DNA of 64,000 nucleotides from Rhodosorus marinus CCMP1338. Taxonomy: Eukaryota > Plantae > Rhodophyta. Location of the stretch: positions 620,001-684,000 of the forward strand of contig JAMWBK010000003.1 of assembly GCA_029953675.1 (NCBI GenBank), in the 5' to 3' direction. The notes below the pieces were generated by a model, which saw only the letters and a list, made by a program, of their open reading frames with translations, was not told the origin of the DNA and searched no databases. Position 1 is the stretch's first letter; every line of letters begins with the position of its first letter. The translations under genes and the position numbers were made by a program. This document shows positions 17,554 to 25,839 of the stretch, piece after piece.

Positions 17554-19297
17554 TCAAGACTTTTTGGTCGGCTTGGCCACCCATAGTTGATCAGCAGGTG
17601 TCGTCGGTGAGATGCTTTTTGTTGGCTTCAGGATCTTCGGTTGAGTAACGTCTGTAAGGACCAGGTATTTAACTGGTTAGTGGCACGGTCAACTCATGCG
17701 CAGGTCTACTCGAAACTCGAGATGGCTGCAAAGGCAACGAAGGTTCCCTCCGGGTTCTGGAAACAAACCCCCCCGTATTTAGAGTAGTTCAGCTCATGGA
17801 GACGACGTACCGTTCTTTGGTTTCGAAACCGTTGGCGCGACTAGCTTCCCGTTAGTTCCACCAGAAGCTGGTGCCTTGGCTCCCTTACGCCTTCGAGAAG
17901 ACCGCTTCTTCTCCGCAGGTGCTGATGAGGGTTCCTGAGCTTTGTCCTTCTACGGTCGGAATAGAAGAGAATATGAATATACACGGACTCCTGTCTCGGT
18001 ACGCATCTTTTTGCGGAGAGCACTGCTCTTGCACAAGCGGAAAAATTCTCACCTGGGTCCTCTTGAGAATTGTCAAGTTGTTACTGTTAGGCTGATCTGT
18101 CTCTGCCGTCGTCCCGGCACCAGATTTCGAAGACGCTTTGGATTTTGACTTGATGGAAGAGGTCGACTGGTTCCCTGAGCTGTTTCCTCTCTTGTTCGAC
18201 TTTGACGACGACTTCTTCCCCTCCCTGCTCGCGGAAAAACGACAGGCCTTCTTAAGCAAAGGCTGTGCAGTTGAATAGGGAAAACCTTGCTCTATAAATC
18301 TTTTGAACCCGGCGTACTTTTCTCTTCTCCTCGCGCGCAGCTCAGCCATAAGCGGTGTCACGATTACCTCCCTCGTGGATGCGCTTTTCTGTGATCCTGC
18401 TGAGTATACGGAGTCGAATCTTGCCGTAGACGTGTTCGAGGCCGTCTGAACCTCTTCCGCCCATTCCTCCAGAAAGGCTTTGAAGTTTCCATCATTCTTT
18501 AGCGTACCCTCAAGTTTGCTGAGCTCGATGAAGAAAGAACAGCAAGGTTAGATTCCCCCCCTTGCACTGGACGCCCCCTCGACAATCACATCCAGAGGCA
18601 AGAACAAAAAAAAACATCCCCCTAGTATAATCCACTCACTTCTTCTCCTTCCGCTTTGAAGAAACGGGAATTCTCTGCAACGGAGCCCGCTCTACTCTTG
18701 CTCGGTAGTCAGAGAGGTTCTTTCCATCAGGGAATCGGTACCCGTTGAAGATGTCCTCAAACTTCAACGCCATCTCTACGCTCTTGAAGCTTAAGTAGCA
18801 CCTACAAGTCACCATGCGGATCAAGTCCGTGAGAAACAGCGGAAAATGAAGTGGTTTAGGCAAAGGAGTTCGCGAATGTCCCAAATCGATCCGTTTCCGA
18901 ATTTTGGGGGGGATTACTTGGCTTCAGGTACAAACCTTGAGTTCCGAAATCCAATCGCACTCGACGGAGGCGCTCCTGTGAGTCTCTTCCCAGTTTTGCC
19001 AGGAACAAAATTGCACCACTCCACTTCGAAACCTTCGGAAGCAGCTTTTGCTACTTCCAGGAAACCTTCCTCAGTTAGATTCGGCGGCAGCAACCTCACA
19101 ACTACCTTCACCCCTTTCGAAGACAGTCCAGAACGCCCAGATAGAACTGCACATCCAGTCACTGGCGGCCCTCCCGGCACCTGTCCCTGAGCCCCACTCC
19201 TACCACCCCCACCTCGTCTTCTACGCCCACGTCTACCCGTCCCTCCCTCCTTCTTCTTCCCCGACTCACCCTCCCCTCGCTTCCCCGCGCCTTCCAT
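17554..19297 (-). CDS. UPF3: Nonsense-mediated decay factor UPF3, multi-exon
   Basis: KVVVRLLPPNLTEEGF, SRCYLSFK, FNGYRF, VERAPLQRIP, EGTLKNDGNFKAFLE and TPLMAELR (Smg4/UPF3 RRM-like domain), followed by a basic low-complexity tail. Stop inferred at 17554-17556. Confidence 0.88.
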
Positions 19298-20853
19298 AAC
19301 TCAAACTCAGCTTTACCCCTCACATCTCCCCCAACAAGGTTTCACAACCCCAAAAAGAAATCCTAATCTCTCACCTTCCAGCGCTACCATCACCACGAAC
19401 ACCACCACTCATCCTTGTACCAAATCACGTAACTCCTTCACCTCCAAAATTCCCCTTCGTCCCAAAACCCATCCAACTCCAACTCTCAAATCTTTCTCTC
19501 TCTCTCTCTCTCACACATAGAAACTCTCACGCCCGCAACGCGATTACTCGTCCTTACCACACATCTCTTTGTCCCATCCTACATTCCCATCCATCGCTCC
19601 ACTCCTTCATCACCAGGTCCATCTTCGTCCTCCCTCTCTTAAGCTGACCTCCTGAAACGTCTCAACGTGATCGGACAAACTCGACCGCCCTGGACGAGGG
19701 GGAACTCGTCCTCAAGATGATGTTCAACCTCTTCTCGGTGACGCTAACGCCAGTTTCATGGAGATTGTTTGGTAAGCTCGCACCGGATCACGAGTCAAAC
19801 CCCCTAATCCTGGCTACTTGGGGGAGAGAACCAGTTCCACTTCTGAAACGAAGCTGAACTAGTATTCAGGAGCCGCAGCATGTGTCTGAACCGAGTTCCT
19901 GCGCTTGCGAAGCCAGCTGCTCTGGTATGCTAGCTCCAGATCAGAGTGAAACCTACCGCTGCTTACCTGTCAGTGAATCAACTAGAACTCAGGAGGTGTC
20001 ACAGGAACTAGTTCGATGCAGAACCGTCGGCAGTATCGCTTGGTGCTTCCAGACTGTGATATAACTTTTCAAACGATACTAAACTAGCACTCTTGACTAC
20101 AGTGTAAAACCTCGTACCAGGCCAAGAATCGAAACCCACTGGTTAGAACAAAAGTGTGAAACTAGCCCAATCTTCATCCGGCTGGTTTCGGAAACCTCGC
20201 CCTGGATCGGAGCGAACCTGCTACCTACCCCTGCCAACCAAGTCAACTTGCAAGACGCAGCTGTCGTTCACCGGGTGTTTTCTCGAAGCAGAAGTTTCTA
20301 CCATACAGAATACACAAGCTTCATCCAGCAGTACGTAAAAGAGTTCGAGGGCTATTGCACAAACCAGTGGAACTTATGGTTCAGTGAAAGCACATCCAGT
20401 TCATCGGTTCGATCCGGGACTTCTTTCCGGAGTGAAGGGGTGTGCGCTTGCAGAAGTACACGGAAGTTCACATTGATGAAGTAGCTCGCGAAGCGAATTA
20501 TGACGCCTTGACAGCCCAGGATCAAAGACCGGGACCTCGAGTAGGCCATGGTCTTCATGGATATTCATCATACCATGGGGTAATAACTATTGTTTGTACG
20601 ATGGATTTTACTCGTTGTCGGGAGCAAAGGCTTCACCATCACTCGAGGCGAAACTTTCGCGTGAGCCGTTTTCTTTGATTTCAAATACAGTTCTCATTTA
20701 CTTTTAGACGAAGCCTTCTTCTTCGTTTTTCTGGGTTTGTCGATTTCCGTCCTCGCTCCCCACTTCATCTCCCACCAAGGTAGGAGATGCCAAAAAAAAA
20801 CCTCACTCGCTGGAAGTTCCCAGACAGTAAAAAGCGTAGCAGGAAAAGTGGTT

Positions 20854-23100
20854 TTAAAACTCGAACGCCTTCTTGCCTTTAACGGAACCCCGAAGTGCCA
20901 ATTTCTCCTCATCGCTAAGCTTGGACACTGCGGTCTTGATTTTCACTTCAGTGTACATCTCAGTCGCCTTCTTTCGTTGCATCGGGTTTCCTTTCATCAA
21001 GTCAAAGATTTCTTTCGTGTACGGTGGTTGGCCTCCCTCCTTAAGCACCTCGTTCACAATCGTGAGCTCAGGCTTAGGTGCTGCTGATTTCACGTTTTCC
21101 AAAATTCTCACTCTAAGAGTCTCGTCAAAGGTGAACTTCGCCTCAGTCTCCACCAACGTCTTAAGTTCGTCCTCGCTCATGCTGTGGTAATACGAAAGAA
21201 AAGAGTTCGCGCTATTAGAAAAGCCTTGATCACCAACCCGATCCTTCAAATGCGGATCCTAGCGCTTCGCAGGCTTGAACACGTCTCTTACCTTGCTCTC
21301 AACTTCTCCCGGACGTTGTATGGCTTCACAATCTTCTCAAACGACCCGCCAAGCAGCGATTTCACCCCGTCGCGCTCCTCAAGCAACTCCTTTTCCGTCG
21401 TATTCATCTTCTTTGCGGAGTACGGATCTATCGGGACACCCATAATCTGCGAGAAAACCAGTCTAGTACTGTGAGTTTACGAGGAAAAACACGGCCAAAC
21501 TCCCATTCAAGTCCTCAGGAGCAAGTCATACCTTTCGATAGGTCCGGTCACCAGTGCAGAGTGTCGGCACCGAGTAGTACAGTCCAGGGGTGATTCCATA
21601 TTCACCATGGGAAACCACGCCCATGGACTGCCACTTGTCACCCGATCCAACATGCAAACAGTTGAGGTGATCTACCGCGGCGGCTGCGGCAGACGCAGCT
21701 GAGGACGCGCTGTGGATCGGTGGAGATGTACTGCATGAGTATGGAGCTTTGCCTTTCTTCTAGTCGACGGCATGTAAAGTGCTGCTGGCTGCTTACCCTC
21801 GTGCATCAATGATCTCGGCGCCGCGTTTTTGCACCTTCGGAACAAACTCGCTTTCGTACCACTTCATGTCCACAACAGATTTCGCCCACTTCCCTTTGAT
21901 CGATGCGTGGGAGATGTCGGGGTATTGAGTAGATGAGTGATTGCCCCAGATGATCATCCGGTCGATCTCATCCACGCTGCATCCATACTGAAGAACGATT
22001 GAAAAGCAGAGATTTGAGCTGCTGGTCTACTGGGAGCTGCTGCTCGAATTCTCTGTCTTCCCTACCTTCTCGGCGAGCATGCCCTCGGCTCTGCTTTGGT
22101 CCAGCTTTGTCATGGCCATGAAGTTCTCCGGGTTCATGTCCGGTGCATTGTGCGCTGCGACAAGTGCATTTGTATTCGCAGGATTTCCAACTACAAGAGT
22201 TTTGCAAGATCTCCTCGCAACTTCATTCAGCGCACTTCCTTGCAACTGATTAGGCAAAAAAATGTACCCGGTTATTCAAACCCTTCACGGCTATAGCAAG
22301 TTCCGCAATGATTACACTGTCCGAGCTGAAGACAATGCCCCCATACCTGAAAGATCTTCGCGTTCGCAGTCAGCAAGTCCTTTCTCTCCATTCCCGGTCC
22401 TCTCGGCCTTGCTCCGACTAGGAGCGCATAATCAGCGTCTCCGAAGGCTTCGTGAGGGTCGGAAGACATGGTTGTTCCTGCCAGAAGTGGGAAAGCGGAG
22501 TCATCAAGTTCCATCTTCACTCCCTGGAGCTTTTTCATGCCCTCACCAGGCACCTCTAGCATCTGCAAGATAACAGGCTGGTCTTTTCCAAGCATTTCTC
22601 CACTGGTTTGAGGTACATGGGAAAAACAAAGGAGCAAGCGAGAATGTCTTTTAGCTCCAAGATCACGGGCTCAACAGATTGCAAATGCACCGAAAATTCA
22701 GACAGGGCAGCGGTCAGAGGGAAGATTAGCAAATATTGGAATCATTCACGTGTACATCAGAATTGTAATGTAGGTAAGAATCTTATATTGATTTCGTCAT
22801 TCCGCGACCAAGTGAGTGTTTTCGTTAAAGAAAAACAAAAGAACAAAGAACTCAACGCAAACCAAAAATCCTCATCAAGCAAACAAACGACAAGAAAAAC
22901 AAACCAAACAAGACAATAAAATCAATCATCCGCGAATCTGGTCCGTTTTTATCGCACCTCGCAATCCGCATGACCAGGGCGTATCCGATCGCTCCCGCCG
23001 CGCCCGTCACCGAAACCCTCAAAGGAGGCAGTCCAGTAGTGGACATGGACCGGATCCCAGACCGGCCCAAACGGCCCAACATCGATACCCTCCCAATCAT
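20854..23100 (-). CDS. MDH: Malate dehydrogenase (cytosolic/type-2 family) with N-terminal presequence and probable C-terminal extension, multi-exon
   Basis: [88 protein letters not shown] and [13 protein letters not shown]. The 3' end at 20854 depends on splicing of intron 21182-21291. Confidence 0.92.
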
Positions 23101-24910
23101 CCTCGATCAAAACCCCCCCACCCACCCCCGCCCTCTTCCCCTTCACCCAAGGCCAAATCCTTTCCTTAAATAACAAAAAAGAGCCTTCCAAGTTTGACAA
23201 ATGAAGGAAGCTCTAACTACGCAGCAGCCAACAATCAATCCTTCATCCACACTGCAACCCACGTCTCCCTTCTTCCTCCCCCCACCCACTAAGACACTGC
23301 CAAACCCCCCTACACACTTCCAAGTCTTCCTCCAAAAACTACAGCTGCTGATCTTCATCGAATCGATCGGATCACTTACCTTCCCCTCCTAAAAACAAAC
23401 AAAAAACACCAAAACCACCCTTTTCCGATCCTACATCTTATACCCCCTCTCTCGTATCTCCGAATTCTATTGTTTAAAGCTTATGTTTCATAGTTATTAT
23501 GTTCATGGAACAATCTACTCAGGCCTTGTCAAAATAGTTAAAATCTCCCAAATTATATTTTATACTACGTTTTGTGTTTTCAGAGGGTGGAAACTTAGCT
23601 GCATTTGATACTGTTCTATACTCTTTGTATATATGATACGGTAAGAATTTTTGTGGACTATTGGACGGGTGGATTGGGGTGTGGGATTTCTTTATTGGTT
23701 AAGGCGTTCGAACCGTGTTTTTTTTGGCCCAAAGGGGGGATTGATTCAGGGTGATAAGGGATAGTTGAGGCTGTCTGCTGGATTTCTCGTTGTTGTTTTC
23801 TCTGAGCTTTGCTTGTTTTGTTGCTGCCCCGATGTGGTCTGGTACTCTTAGAGCCTTTTATGAAAGGCCAGCTCTGATTTGCGGTCAGTTCCTAGTTTCC
23901 TGCTTTGTTGGGTGCCTGGTTCTTTGCTCTCGGGAGCTCATTCCTTGTGGAGTCGCAAAAGGTCGGCAGAAGACTTCGAACGCGATCACCGATGTTCATC
24001 TTTTTGGGAGGGGGAGGGGGAGGGCTCGCTAGTATAAATCATCTGAGGGTCTTCTAGTTGAACTTTGAGTGAGAATGTGTATCGCTTCCGCCTAAGTCCA
24101 GGCTGTTTAGTTTTCACGATGCCGGGACGGGGGGAATGATGGTGGCCTGTTCTTTGAGAGTCGCTCCTTGACGAATAAGCGATTCGGATTTCAGTACTGA
24201 TCTTAGCCACGATAGAGGCGCAATCGCAGTTGGGATATCGTCCGAGGTAGTTACTTACCAAATTGAGAACGGCAACGCGGGGAAACCAGAATCAGGAGTG
24301 TGTGTTATTCCAACCCCGGGAGTACAGTAGCAGCATTGGCTCCTCCTGTCTTATTCTCGGACTCTGTTACCACGCTGAACGCTCTGCTGCCACGGAACGG
24401 TCGGAGCCCCCAGAATCATTTTCTCAGTCTCCGACGACGATCACGCACTCTCAGGGTTTCAGTTTCTAGAAGTCCATCGTCCTCCACAAATCCACCCAAA
24501 CACGACTCACCTCCACACACCAAGCAAAACAATACTAGTACACGCCAATTTTACATAGTACATAAAACTAACAGAAACAACAACGCTATATAGATTGAAT
24601 CAATCACTATAAGTAATCTTTGTTTTTGGAGCATTTTGGATCAAATGCGGCCGCCGGCGCCGTGCGATTATTTGATGGTTTTTAGGGGTTTGGGGAGGAT
24701 GCATTGAAAATTTGGTGAGGACGTCCTCTTTTTCAGGAATTGAGAGTGGGGTTTGGATTGCTTGGGTGCGTGGCGTGTGTAAGGTGTGGGGGAGAGGAAG
24801 TTCGCTGTTGGTTTTTGGGGTGGGTGGTATTATCTTGTAGGGATAGAGGATAGAACAATTATCTATCTCTCTATATATATATTAGTAGGAACGAGGTAGA
24901 GAGATTTGAC

Positions 24911-25839
24911 ATGGGTTCGAAACTCCCTCATGCGACCGTCTCGGCGGCGGTGGCCGAGATTTTGGCGGAAGCGAAGGAGAAGAAGAGGAACTTCGTGGAG
25001 ACAATCGAGCTTCAGATTGGGTTGAAGAATTATGATACGAAGAAGGACAAGCGTTTCTCCGGGACGATTAAGCTGCCCCACGTACCGAGACCGAGATTGA
25101 AGGTGAGGTTTCCAGCTTTTGCATAGTTGACTCTACAGATTGAAGTTTGATGGTGGGAGTATTAGCTGAGGAGGGGGGCGGATCATTGCTATTGAACAAG
25201 GGGATATCGCACTCACGTCGATGAGTATGGATTGTTGAGCAGTTTGTTTTCGCTTTGTTTTCTTCTCTTGTAGGTTGCAGTGCTCGGAGACGCGCAGCAC
25301 GTAACGGAAGCTCAGGCGCTTAATGTTGATGTATATGATGTTGATGCTCTGAAGAAGTTCAACAAAGCCAAGAAGCCGATCAAGAATTTTGCTAAGAAGT
25401 ACGATGCCTTCTTGGCGTCTGAATCTATCATCCGTATTATCCCGCGTATCTTGGGACCTGGACTGCTGAAGGCTGGCAAGTTCCCTGCCCTTTTGACTCA
25501 CTCGGACTCGATGGACGATAAGGTAAGTGAAACTTTGAGCACGCTTTGTCGGCATCGACAGTCTTTTCCTTCAGGCAGAAGCGGTTCATGCGCTGATAAT
25601 TCTGCTGTTCGTCCTTGCTCGCGTAGATCGGCGATTTGAAGAGCACCATCAAGTTCCAGTTGAAGAAGGTTTTGTGCCTAGCTGTTGCGGTTGGAAACGT
25701 TGAACAGAGTGAGGAAGAGGTTATCGCGAATGTTACCCTAGCCGTCAACTTCCTGGTGTCCTTGTTGAAGAAGCATTGGCAGAATGTTAAATCGCTCCAC
25801 ATCAAGAGCACTATGGGAACACCAAGACGGCTGTTTTAA
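24911..25839 (+). CDS. RPL10A: 60S ribosomal protein L10a (uL1), 3 exons (24911-25102, 25274-25522, 25627-25839)
   Basis: [19 protein letters not shown]...[61 protein letters not shown]. Confidence 0.97.

What the first reader, a model, noticed from the sequence alone, without database searches (positions are those of the whole stretch)
20854..21350. Malate dehydrogenase with an apparent ~128-aa C-terminal extension of unknown fold
Seen: the MDH fold ends at ...[13 protein letters not shown] (21351), but the frame continues [19 protein letters not shown]. It then passes a canonical phase-2 intron (GTAAGA at 21291 to ACAG at 21182) into a 108-codon charged, probably helical exon ([16 protein letters not shown]...KGKKAFEF*). 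Retaining the intron gives a stop right away (…LRAR*), so short and long isoforms are possible. Established: type-2 MDHs normally end within a few residues of this helix, and the redox-regulatory tail of plastid NADP-MDH is short and Cys-containing, whereas this extension has no Cys. Inference: a new docking or regulatory domain, for example for membrane-complex or metabolon association.
Basis: partly seen in the sequence, partly recalled or inferred. Interest (0 to 1): 0.7.

Follow-up and report, generated by a model that had tools for sequence, protein, structure and literature searches.

The report
Red-algal malate dehydrogenase with orphan tail
The malate dehydrogenase gene of the red alga Rhodosorus marinus really does splice on an extra 108-codon exon, giving the enzyme a conserved 128-residue helical tail that occurs nowhere except on this enzyme in one class of red algae; what the tail does is still unknown.

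Summary
The minus-strand gene (23100-20854) has 7 exons. Removing the 110-nt phase-2 intron 21291-21182 joins ...EKLRA to S-MSEDELK..., giving a 476-aa protein: presequence, NAD-type MDH core (residues 26-348) and a 128-aa tail.

A fully spliced 1794-nt transcript contig from a congeneric strain aligns to the window in seven blocks that end at these exon borders. The public R. marinus protein KAJ8906445.1 equals residues 51-476 of my model, so the join is already annotated, although that model lacks exon 1. Transcript ORFs ending LRAR* (368 aa, intron 6 retained) also exist.

The tail is selected as strongly as the core (dN/dS 0.06-0.07 versus 0.09). It is conserved in Bangiopsis, Purpureofilum and a fourth lineage. 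It has no Pfam match or significant PDB match. A search of 1.84 billion proteins found it only next to MDH.

Function is not established. My preferred guess is a cis-attached regulatory or docking module. Two leads are an invariant penultimate Glu, as in the NADP-MDH pseudo-substrate tail, and a weak, non-robust similarity to ribosomal protein eL36.

Verdict: a real, undescribed, lineage-restricted variant of a known enzyme, of moderate interest.

The parts
22958..23100 (-). Exon 1. It holds ATG 23100, an Arg/Ser-rich presequence without acidic residues ([23 protein letters not shown]) and the GAAGAIG dinucleotide-binding motif. It is missing from the public NCBI gene model.
   Evidence: confirmed by transcripts P0125/P0135 and by the L006 alignment block 23102-22958; P0124 starts at residue 51.
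22347..22602 (-). Exon 2 of the MDH gene.
   Evidence: block 22604-22347.
22066..22245 (-). Exon 3 of the MDH gene.
21797..21987 (-). Exon 4, which includes the catalytic His in WGNHS.
21532..21709 (-). Exon 5 of the MDH gene.
21292..21446 (-). Exon 6. The last MDH helix runs to L348 (21351). The 19 full codons of the linker plus 2 bases of Ser368 follow (21350-21292, [19 protein letters not shown]).
   Evidence: The linker shows 5 synonymous and 0 non-synonymous changes against L001.
21182..21291 (-). Intron 6: 110 nt, phase 2, GTAAGA...CTAAT (37 nt upstream of the acceptor)...CACAG. It is removed in the long isoform and retained in the short one.
   Evidence: Divergence from L001 is 17.9% with indels. 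Donor, branch-like CTRAY and acceptor are kept in L001.
21288..21290 (-). TAA stop, used only if intron 6 is retained. The product is 368 aa and ends LRAR.
   Evidence: Transcript ORFs P0131, P0129, P0127 and P0126 end LRAR.
20854..21181 (-). Exon 7 coding part: the third base of Ser368, then 108 codons (MSEDELK...KGKKAFEF) and TAA at 20856-20854. This is the orphan helical tail.
   Evidence: No Pfam family.
20923..21069 (-). Best-predicted and best-conserved core of the tail, residues 406-454: helix, then G-x-P-P-Y-T-K loop, short helix, K-G turn and a long helix. This is also the stretch with the weak eL36 resemblance.
   Evidence: AlphaFold pLDDT is 85-91 in the tail-only model and 71-87 in the full-length model. 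Invariant residues. eL36 alignments.
20857..20865 (-). C-terminal Phe-Glu-Phe. A hydrophobic residue, an invariant penultimate Glu and a hydrophobic last residue are found in all tails seen (FEF, LEM, LEL, YEF).
20508..20853 (-). 3' untranslated region, at least this long.
   Evidence: The last block of transcript contig L006 aligns to 21183-20508.

Best explanation
This is one gene, not two. It is the nuclear gene for a presequence-bearing, NAD-dependent type-2 (Thermus-like) malate dehydrogenase of Rhodosorus marinus. Its sixth and last intron is spliced so that a seventh exon adds a 108-residue helical module to a 20-residue linker, giving a 128-residue C-terminal extension.

Shown:
- The splice occurs.
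- The extension is conserved across the red-algal class Stylonematophyceae.
- It is under purifying selection as strong as that on the catalytic core.
- It is found only attached to this MDH.
- It has no Cys and no known family.
- Transcripts that retain intron 6 encode a tail-less 368-aa enzyme.

Inferred:
- The enzyme is mitochondrial.
- The tail is a cis-acting appendage that modulates the enzyme or places it, rather than a second enzymatic activity.

My preferred mechanism, at about 0.4 of the weight, is a small folded helical bundle (residues ~406-454) that docks the dimeric enzyme to a partner or surface in the matrix. The sub-variant I rate next, at about 0.2, is that the invariant penultimate Glu together with the terminal carboxylate reaches a dicarboxylate-binding active site, as it does in chloroplast NADP-MDH. 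Intron-6 retention would then be a way to make enzyme without the appendage. The confidence of 0.85 given for this explanation refers to the shown part only.
For: Gene model and junction:
- Transcript contig L006 (1794 nt, ORF 476 aa) aligns in seven blocks whose ends are my exon borders. It reads GCAAG|CATGA across the junction.
- Transcript ORFs P0125, P0135, P0133, P0002, P0128 and P0130 all read ...EKLRASM....
- NCBI KAJ8906445.1 of R. marinus is identical to residues 51-476.

Conservation:
- Bangiopsis sp. CCMP1999 P0136 and Purpureofilum P0003, both 476 aa, carry tails about 40% identical to this one.
- Genomic contig L002 has the MDH exon, a phase-2 GTGAGT intron and then a tail exon.

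Selection:
- dN/dS is 0.058-0.071 for the tail and 0.087 for the core.
- Mismatches fall at codon positions 1/2/3 as 3/4/21.
- GC3 is 0.63 in the tail and 0.61 in the core.

Orphan status:
- No Pfam match.
- HMMER against 1.84 billion representatives finds only MDH-linked copies, plus one spurious tandem-repeat protein.

MDH identity:
- Pfam Ldh_1_N and Ldh_1_C both match.
- NCBIfam NF003916 scores 464 bits against a cut-off of 271, over residues 26-348.
- Thermus MDH matches at E = 6e-117.

Fold: five predicted helices, with the core at pLDDT 85-91.

Penultimate Glu: it is invariant. The precedent is in NADP-MDH, where the penultimate glutamate binds the active-site Arg and blocks oxaloacetate (PMC3838966).
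Against: - There is no direct evidence for any function.
- AlphaFold did not place the last seven residues with confidence (pLDDT below 50). The alignment behind the tail holds only 3-4 independent lineages.
- Invariance of the penultimate Glu therefore rests on few lineages.
- The florideophyte orthologues have other, shorter tails without it.
- The transcripts come from congeneric strains (94-97% amino-acid identity), not from the sequenced strain itself.
- Trinity isoform ORFs cannot say how abundant the short form is, or whether it is translated.
- Mitochondrial location rests on the look of the presequence and on the name given to the Chondrus orthologue.
Confidence: 0.85

Rival explanations
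1. The 108-codon ORF is a separate downstream gene with its own ATG at 21180. The apparent fusion would then be read-through or a gene-model artefact.
For: An ATG sits one base after the acceptor. ORF callers on genomic contigs report the tail as a stand-alone 116-125-aa protein (P0001, P0123). Only 108 nt separate the retained-intron stop from this ATG.
Against: Spliced transcripts join the two frames exactly. The Met is not conserved at that position: Bangiopsis and Purpureofilum read ...RGEGISPEEEQ... and ...RGQSTSSEEKE... there, inside one continuous transcript ORF. Both 'stand-alone' hits lie directly downstream of MDH exons on their contigs. No free-standing homologue exists among 1.84 billion representatives. 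The 110-nt spacer carries a consensus donor, a branch-like site and an acceptor, and diverges like the other introns.
Confidence: 0.03
2. The tail is an autoinhibitory pseudo-substrate arm. Its penultimate Glu475 and the C-terminal carboxylate occupy the oxaloacetate/malate site. This would be a Cys-free counterpart of the chloroplast NADP-MDH C-terminal extension, relieved by a ligand, a partner or intron retention.
For: The hydrophobic-Glu-hydrophobic C-terminus is invariant in all six tails while neighbouring positions vary. In NADP-MDH the penultimate Glu binds the active-site Arg. [quoted passage not shown] The substrate-binding Arg residues are present.
Against: The NADP-MDH arm extends only about 17 residues beyond the aligned core and is held by a disulfide. 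Here there are 128 residues, a folded module and no Cys. AlphaFold gave the last residues pLDDT below 50 and no docked pose that I could inspect. Only 3-4 lineages support the invariance. The florideophyte tails lack the motif.
Confidence: 0.2
3. The core of the tail (residues ~406-460) derives from, or mimics, cytosolic ribosomal protein eL36. It would give the enzyme an RNA/DNA- or ribosome-binding function.
For: The four-sequence tail profile hit only eL36 chains at the top of the PDB sequence search (Tetrahymena E = 0.0037; Plasmodium and others 0.025-0.04). The alignment covers the family's G-F-A-P-Y-E-K / E-L-I-K-x-G / K-K-A core. eL36 is still the commonest family among the hits with the other two profiles. 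Real eL36 sequences out-score 3000 composition-matched shuffles for 3 of 6 sequences, with one further sequence exceeded by a single shuffle. The hhalign pairwise P is 6e-4. The order of secondary-structure elements is the same. The tail is basic (pI 9.2) while the core is acidic (pI 6.2).
Against: Adding a fifth and sixth tail weakened the hit to E = 0.15-0.38, and a Rho-GEF then ranked first. The core-only profile gives E = 0.07-0.6. The hhalign probability is only 29%. Pfam Ribosomal_L36e was not hit by any tail. Foldseek of the tail model against the PDB found nothing at E <= 1. Human eL36 scores at background level.
Confidence: 0.1
4. The extension is functionally neutral. It would be an exonised piece of downstream sequence that is tolerated, with the tail-less product as the working enzyme.
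For: Red-algal orthologues carry very different tails: about 50 aa and Ala-rich in Gracilariales/Ceramiales, and about 25 aa and Lys/Arg-rich in Gigartinales. This shows the C-terminus tolerates change. Transcripts that retain intron 6 exist.
Against: dN/dS of 0.06-0.07 equals that of the catalytic core. There are no indels in 324 nt, against 5 gap columns in the 110-nt intron. Length is kept at 476 aa and identity is about 40% across genera, with 27 invariant tail positions.
Confidence: 0.05

Closest known systems
Thermus flavus/thermophilus NAD-malate dehydrogenase (PDB 1bmd, 4kde), and the gammaproteobacterial MDHs of NCBIfam NF003916
   Same: The catalytic core is the same. Residues 26-347 align end to end with residues 4-324 of the 327-aa enzyme at E = 6e-117, and identity to gammaproteobacterial MDHs is 60-63%. 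The GxxGxxG motif, the acidic NAD-specificity residue, the substrate Arg residues and the catalytic His/Asp are all present.
   Different: The bacterial enzymes stop within about 3 residues of L348. They have no presequence, no introns and no tail.
Chloroplast NADP-malate dehydrogenase of sorghum/Flaveria (PDB 7mdh, 1civ)
   Same: It is a type-2 MDH core carrying a C-terminal extension whose penultimate residue is Glu. In NADP-MDH that Glu blocks the active site (PMC3838966). The cores align at E = 6e-83.
   Different: The NADP-MDH extension reaches only about 17 residues past the aligned core, is locked by a Cys-Cys disulfide and is controlled by thioredoxin. That enzyme is plastidial and NADP-specific. 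Here the extension is 128 residues, is helical and has no Cys. The core is the NAD type, and TIGR01757 scores 334 bits against a cut-off of 598.
Orthologous MDHs of florideophyte red algae (Gracilariopsis chorda, Agarophyton, Melanothamnus, Campylaephora; Chondrus, Mazzaella)
   Same: They belong to the same MDH clade (56-66% identity) and have the same kind of N-terminal presequence. The first intron is in the same place (MRIA|S|GEML in Gracilariopsis). All carry some C-terminal extension beyond ...HLLP.
   Different: Their tails are 25-60 aa long, are encoded in the same exon as the core, and lack the helical core and the Glu-hydrophobic end. Homology of their tails to the Rhodosorus tail could not be shown (hhalign P = 0.077).
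Cytosolic ribosomal protein eL36 (Pfam PF01158)
   Same: There is a weak sequence resemblance over about 55 residues, with the same order of helix, G-x-x-P-Y loop, helix and long basic helix.
   Different: The resemblance is not statistically robust. There is no Pfam hit and no structural match, and the context is entirely different, being fused to a metabolic enzyme that carries an organellar presequence.

Membership tests
Type-2 NAD-dependent malate dehydrogenase (NCBIfam NF003916 / TIGR01759 MalateDH-SF1) | Ldh_1_N and Ldh_1_C domains in order, above Pfam thresholds | tested here: met
   PF00056 covers residues 28-173 (107 bits, cut-off 27). PF02866 covers residues 179-344 (129 bits, cut-off 22.6).
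Type-2 NAD-dependent malate dehydrogenase (NCBIfam NF003916 / TIGR01759 MalateDH-SF1) | Full-length match to the curated equivalog model above its cut-off | tested here: met
   NF003916 scores 463.9 bits against 271 and covers profile positions 5-327 of 328. TIGR01759 scores 419.8 bits against 345.65.
Type-2 NAD-dependent malate dehydrogenase (NCBIfam NF003916 / TIGR01759 MalateDH-SF1) | Catalytic and substrate residues: GxxGxxG, acidic residue after strand 2 (NAD over NADP), two Arg in [11 protein letters not shown], Asp/Arg in LDQSRA, His in WGNHS | tested here: met
   All are present in the translated model. E64, R115, R121, D182, R185 and H210 are invariant in the 10-sequence alignment, and the motifs align with Thermus MDH. 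Their roles are taken from established knowledge of the family.
Type-2 NAD-dependent malate dehydrogenase (NCBIfam NF003916 / TIGR01759 MalateDH-SF1) | Oxaloacetate/malate oxidoreductase activity | not testable with these tools
   An enzyme assay of recombinant protein is needed.
Thioredoxin-regulated chloroplast NADP-MDH (TIGR01757) | Match to the curated model above its cut-off, and NADP specificity | tested here: not met
   TIGR01757 scores 334 bits against a cut-off of 598. The acidic NAD-type residue E64 is present.
Thioredoxin-regulated chloroplast NADP-MDH (TIGR01757) | Regulatory Cys pair in the C-terminal extension | tested here: not met
   There is no Cys in the 128-residue tail, nor in the tails of Bangiopsis, Purpureofilum or L002.
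Thioredoxin-regulated chloroplast NADP-MDH (TIGR01757) | Penultimate Glu at the C-terminus that can occupy the active site | tested here: inconclusive
   Glu475 is penultimate and invariant in 6 of 6 tails. Whether it reaches the active site was not testable, since the last residues have pLDDT below 50.
Ribosomal protein eL36 (Pfam PF01158) | Significant sequence match to the family | tested here: not met
   No Pfam hit for any tail at E <= 10. Profile against PDB eL36 gives E = 0.0037 with 4 tails, but 0.15 with 6 tails and 0.068 with the core only. The hhalign probability is 29%.
Ribosomal protein eL36 (Pfam PF01158) | Same three-dimensional fold | tested here: inconclusive
   Foldseek of the tail model against the PDB gave no eL36 hit and nothing at E <= 1. 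However, the model is only partly confident (mean pLDDT 70), and short helical queries are hard for Foldseek.
Mitochondrial matrix proteins with a cleavable presequence | N-terminal Arg/Ser-rich presequence without acidic residues; experimental localisation | not testable with these tools
   The sequence [23 protein letters not shown] has 5 Arg, no Asp/Glu and no Phe. Orthologues carry similar leaders, and the Chondrus orthologue is named 'mitochondrial precursor' by its source. No targeting predictor or localisation data were available.

The most novel reading that the evidence does not exclude
The tail core is a captured, highly diverged eL36-like nucleic-acid-binding module. It would tether the mitochondrial TCA-cycle MDH to RNA, ribosomes or the mitochondrial DNA. 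Its restriction to Stylonematophyceae would then be linked to that class's peculiar mitochondria, which have high-copy minicircular genomes and most mitoribosomal protein genes moved to the nucleus (PMC10250338).
Probability: 0.06. Interest if true: 0.8.

Novelty: new variant of a known kind. Interest (0 to 1): 0.4.

Why it matters
Malate dehydrogenase is one of the most studied and most uniform enzymes. Extensions with a demonstrated role are rare, and the thioredoxin-controlled tails of plastid NADP-MDH are the textbook case.

Here a whole class of red algae has kept, under strong selection, a 128-residue helical module that exists nowhere else in 1.84 billion representative proteins. It can be left off simply by not splicing one intron.

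If the module turns out to inhibit, dock or oligomerise the enzyme, it would be a second, Cys-free solution to regulating a type-2 MDH. It would also be a clean example of a lineage-born domain. If it binds nucleic acid, it would link a TCA enzyme to organelle gene expression.

On the practical side, the result corrects the public gene model, which lacks exon 1 and with it the NAD-binding motif. It also gives a well-defined construct set for biochemistry.

Tried and rejected
1. Exact look-up of my long, short and tail-only proteins found none in the collection. This was explained later: the public model starts at Met51.
2. Word-indexed homologue searches with the tail, as a single sequence and as a profile, returned only P0001. 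They missed even P0002-P0004, so they say little about distribution. The exhaustive HMMER run is the informative one.
3. P0122, a 1624-aa protein at E = 1.7e-28, is 29 tandem copies of one unit each matching weakly. I rejected it as a repeat artefact.
4. Pfam searches on the tails gave only chance-level hits at E = 0.04-0.07 (DUF2007, MinC_N, Leuk-A4-hydro_C), each in one member.
5. The eL36 lead was followed through five tests and one structural test. It persists but is never robust, so I keep it as a rival and not as a finding.
6. Foldseek of the tail model against the PDB gave nothing at E <= 1.
7. The full-length AlphaFold model built from a 10-sequence alignment was too poor (mean pLDDT 62) to say whether the tail packs on the core.
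8. Homology between the florideophyte tails and this tail could not be shown (hhalign P = 0.077, probability 0.7%).
9. A scan of JGI metagenome contigs with tail patterns gave 308 pattern matches, none confirmed.
10. By eye I considered SAP/HeH motifs, a PTS1 signal and a KKXX signal. The spacing or the terminal residues do not fit, and Pfam gave no support.
11. Literature searches found no paper on Rhodosorus MDH or on C-terminal extensions of red-algal MDH. One search timed out.
Full report
**What is in the sequence**

I read 20500-23500 on the minus strand and assembled the gene. It has seven exons: 23100-22958, 22602-22347, 22245-22066, 21987-21797, 21709-21532, 21446-21292 and 21181-20854. 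All introns are GT...AG and are 78-355 nt long.

- L348 of ...[13 protein letters not shown] is coded by 21353-21351.
- The frame continues [19 protein letters not shown].
- The donor is AAG|GTAAGA, with its G at 21291.
- The acceptor CACAG ends at 21182.
- AG plus C at 21181 makes Ser368, and Met369 is at 21180.
- The ORF runs 108 codons to TAA at 20856-20854.
- If the 110-nt intron is kept, the frame reads ...LRAR and stops at 21290-21288.

The long product is 476 aa and the short one is 368 aa. The tail contains no Cys.

**The core is an ordinary, apparently intact MDH**

- Pfam finds Ldh_1_N (residues 28-173) and Ldh_1_C (179-344), and nothing in the tail.
- The NCBIfam equivalog NF003916 scores 464 bits against a cut-off of 271.
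- The NADP-MDH and eukaryotic cytosolic MDH models score below their cut-offs.
- The closest solved structure is Thermus MDH (327 aa), which aligns to residues 26-347 at E = 6e-117.
- The GAAGAIG motif, the acidic NAD-type residue E64, R115/R121, D182/R185 and H210 are present. Those individual residues are invariant among the relatives aligned.
- The first ~22 residues are Arg/Ser-rich, with no acidic residue and no Phe. That looks like a mitochondrial presequence rather than a red-lineage plastid leader. This is an inference from established knowledge. The Chondrus orthologue is named a mitochondrial precursor by its source.

**Where the window comes from**

The best MDH hits are red algae. 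Cluster look-up shows that NCBI KAJ8906445.1 (NDN08_002938, Rhodosorus marinus, on a 3.35-Mb contig) belongs to the top cluster. It is identical to residues 51-476 of my model. This is the chromosome-level R. marinus CCMP1338 assembly of Lee et al. 2023 (PMC10250338).

The public annotation therefore already joins exon 6 to exon 7. It misses exon 1, and with it the presequence and the dinucleotide-binding motif.

**Is the splice real?**

Yes. Three lines of evidence agree.

- JGI contig L006 (1794 nt) carries one uninterrupted 476-aa ORF. Aligned to the window, it breaks into seven blocks: 23102-22958, 22604-22347, 22249-22067, 21987-21796, 21708-21532, 21448-21292 and 21183-20508. These are my exon borders within the 1-4 nt ambiguity of local alignment. 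Across the last junction it reads ...GAGAGCAAG|CATGAATAAG.... It is 93-95% identical to the window in the first six (MDH-coding) blocks and 80% over the last block, which is mostly 3' UTR, so it comes from a congeneric strain.
- MMETSP ORFs from another strain tell the same story. P0125 (476 aa), P0002, P0128 and P0130 read ...[13 protein letters not shown].... P0131 (368 aa), P0129, P0127 and P0126 end ...EKLRAR, meaning intron 6 is retained. P0132 stops at intron 5.
However, the ORFs of this gene also start at several internal Met residues or stop at intron 5, as if other introns were unspliced too. The short form may simply be pre-mRNA.

The immediate in-frame stop is an automatic consequence of a phase-2 GTRAG donor. 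Its conservation (TAA here, TGA in L001 and L002) therefore says nothing either way.

**Is the tail coding and selected?**

I compared the window with L001, a 1235-nt genomic contig of a related strain.

| Region | Mismatch | Indels | Codon positions 1/2/3 | Codons changed: syn / non-syn |
|---|---|---|---|---|
| Exon 7 | 8.6% | none | 3/4/21 | 21 / 7 |
| Linker | 8.8% | none | 1/0/4 | 5 / 0 |
| Intron 6 | 17.9% | 5 gap columns | not applicable | not applicable |
| Introns 4 and 5 | 16% and 23% | 1 and 2 gap columns | not applicable | not applicable |

Nei-Gojobori dN/dS is 0.071 for exon 7, 0.058 for linker plus exon 7, and 0.087 for the MDH core exons. GC3 is the same in tail and core.

**Distribution**

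- Bangiopsis sp. CCMP1999 (P0136) and Purpureofilum apyrenoidigerum (P0003) both have 476-aa proteins. Their tails are about 40% identical to this one.
- Two Logan contigs (L002, L003) from an unnamed sample show an MDH exon ending ...LAKGAK, a phase-2 GTGAGT donor, a ~127-nt intron and a tail exon ending KKAYEF. The intron is thus conserved in phase, and to within two codons in position.
- A profile of the tails searched with HMMER against 1.84 billion representative proteins found only P0004, P0001 and P0123. All three are MDH-linked. It also found P0122, a tandem-repeat artefact.
- There is no free-standing homologue anywhere, and the Met at the start of exon 7 is not conserved. The 'separate gene' reading is therefore rejected.
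- Florideophyte orthologues carry other tails: about 50 aa in Gracilariales/Ceramiales and about 25 aa, very basic, in Gigartinales.
- In Gracilariopsis the tail is contiguous with the core in one exon. The only intron sits at the same place as intron 1 here.
- Homology of those tails to this one could not be shown.

**What the tail looks like**

AlphaFold on the four-sequence tail alignment gives five helices. The core, tail residues ~58-106 (protein residues 406-454), has pLDDT 85-91. The flanks and the last seven residues score low. The full-length model was poor (mean pLDDT 62) but again gave 71-87 for that core.

The tail is basic overall (pI 9.2), while the core has pI 6.2. Within the tail, the first part of exon 7 is acidic and the rest is basic.

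Twenty-seven tail positions are invariant in six sequences. They include R43, R45, E48, N49, E58, L59, N63, G70, P72, T75, G84, R89, K90, Y96 and the penultimate Glu.

**Two leads on mechanism**

*First lead: the C-terminal motif.* Every tail ends with a hydrophobic residue, Glu and a hydrophobic residue (FEF, LEM, LEL, YEF). In chloroplast NADP-MDH the penultimate Glu of the C-terminal extension binds the active-site Arg and blocks oxaloacetate. [quoted passage not shown] A Cys-free pseudo-substrate arm is therefore conceivable here. I could not test whether the terminus reaches an active site.

*Second lead: eL36.*
- The four-tail profile hit eL36 chains as the top four PDB sequences (E = 0.0037-0.04), aligned over eL36's conserved core.
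- Real eL36 sequences beat 3000 composition-matched shuffles in three of six cases, and a fourth was exceeded by a single shuffle.
- hhalign gives P = 6e-4 but a probability of only 29%.
- With six tails the E-value drops to 0.15-0.38, and with the core only it is 0.07-0.6.
- Pfam shows nothing and Foldseek shows nothing.

I treat this as an unproven resemblance.

**Verdict**

The sequence itself is already public, but I found no description of the extension in the literature I could search.

The best-supported statement is that this is a genuine, selected, class-restricted orphan module fused to a presequence-bearing NAD-MDH. It is optional at the RNA level through intron retention. How it works is inference. 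I favour a cis-attached docking or regulatory module, with pseudo-substrate autoinhibition as the most testable specific version.

Noticed in passing
window 22958-23100 (-): The public gene model for this locus (NCBI KAJ8906445.1, 426 aa) starts at Met51 inside exon 2. It lacks exon 1, and with it the presequence and the GAAGAIG NAD-binding motif. Transcript ORFs P0125 and P0135 and transcript contig L006 include exon 1.
   Followed up: yes
window 22603-22957 (-) and L005 3130-3420: Intron 1 (355 nt, phase 2, splitting MRIA|S|GEML) is at the same codon as the single intron of the Gracilariopsis chorda orthologue. It is therefore an old red-algal intron position shared across subphyla.
   Followed up: partly
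window 25280-25639 (+): This ORF fragment matches Pfam Ribosomal_L1 (E = 7e-14). It is probably an exon of the cytosolic uL1/L10a gene, upstream of and divergent from the MDH gene.
   Followed up: partly
window 18914-19297 (-): This ORF has a Gly/Arg-rich N-terminus and a Smg4/UPF3 domain match (E = 8e-10). It is probably part of a UPF3-like nonsense-mediated-decay factor gene downstream of MDH.
   Followed up: partly
proteins P0030-P0121: The red-algal MDH clade is 60-63% identical to gammaproteobacterial MDHs (Ectothiorhodospira, Marinimicrobium, Cellvibrio). That is about as close as it is to its florideophyte orthologues (56-66%). This suggests a bacterial-type origin for this organelle-targeted enzyme. 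No tree was built.
   Followed up: no
proteins P0012-P0028, P0040, P0047: Gigartinales-type orthologues (Chondrus, Mazzaella and many Logan contigs) end in a short, strongly basic tail (...KPARKKRAKKATA). Gracilariales/Ceramiales orthologues have a ~50-aa tail (KPVSWNILESL...AKAAAA). So every red-algal member of the clade seen here, except P0083 which ends at ...HLLP, carries some C-terminal extension, but of unrelated sequence.
   Followed up: partly
MMETSP ORFs P0002, P0126-P0132: One Trinity gene gives at least nine different ORFs. They start at Met1, Met51, Met170 or Met204, and end at the intron-5 stop, the intron-6 stop or the true stop. This suggests that incompletely spliced RNA is abundant for this gene in Rhodosorus.
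   Followed up: partly
L004 2049-3485 (-): The Bangiopsis-like JGI contig that carries the MDH-tail ORF also carries a convergent 478-aa PPR-repeat ORF about 500 nt downstream. No PPR gene was seen at the corresponding place in the window, so this neighbourhood is not conserved.
   Followed up: no
PDB 6um4_A: A 444-aa solved MDH aligns to query residues 24-361, about 13 residues into the linker, and has a ~95-residue N-terminal extension. I did not identify the organism or check whether its C-terminal residues resemble the linker.
   Followed up: no
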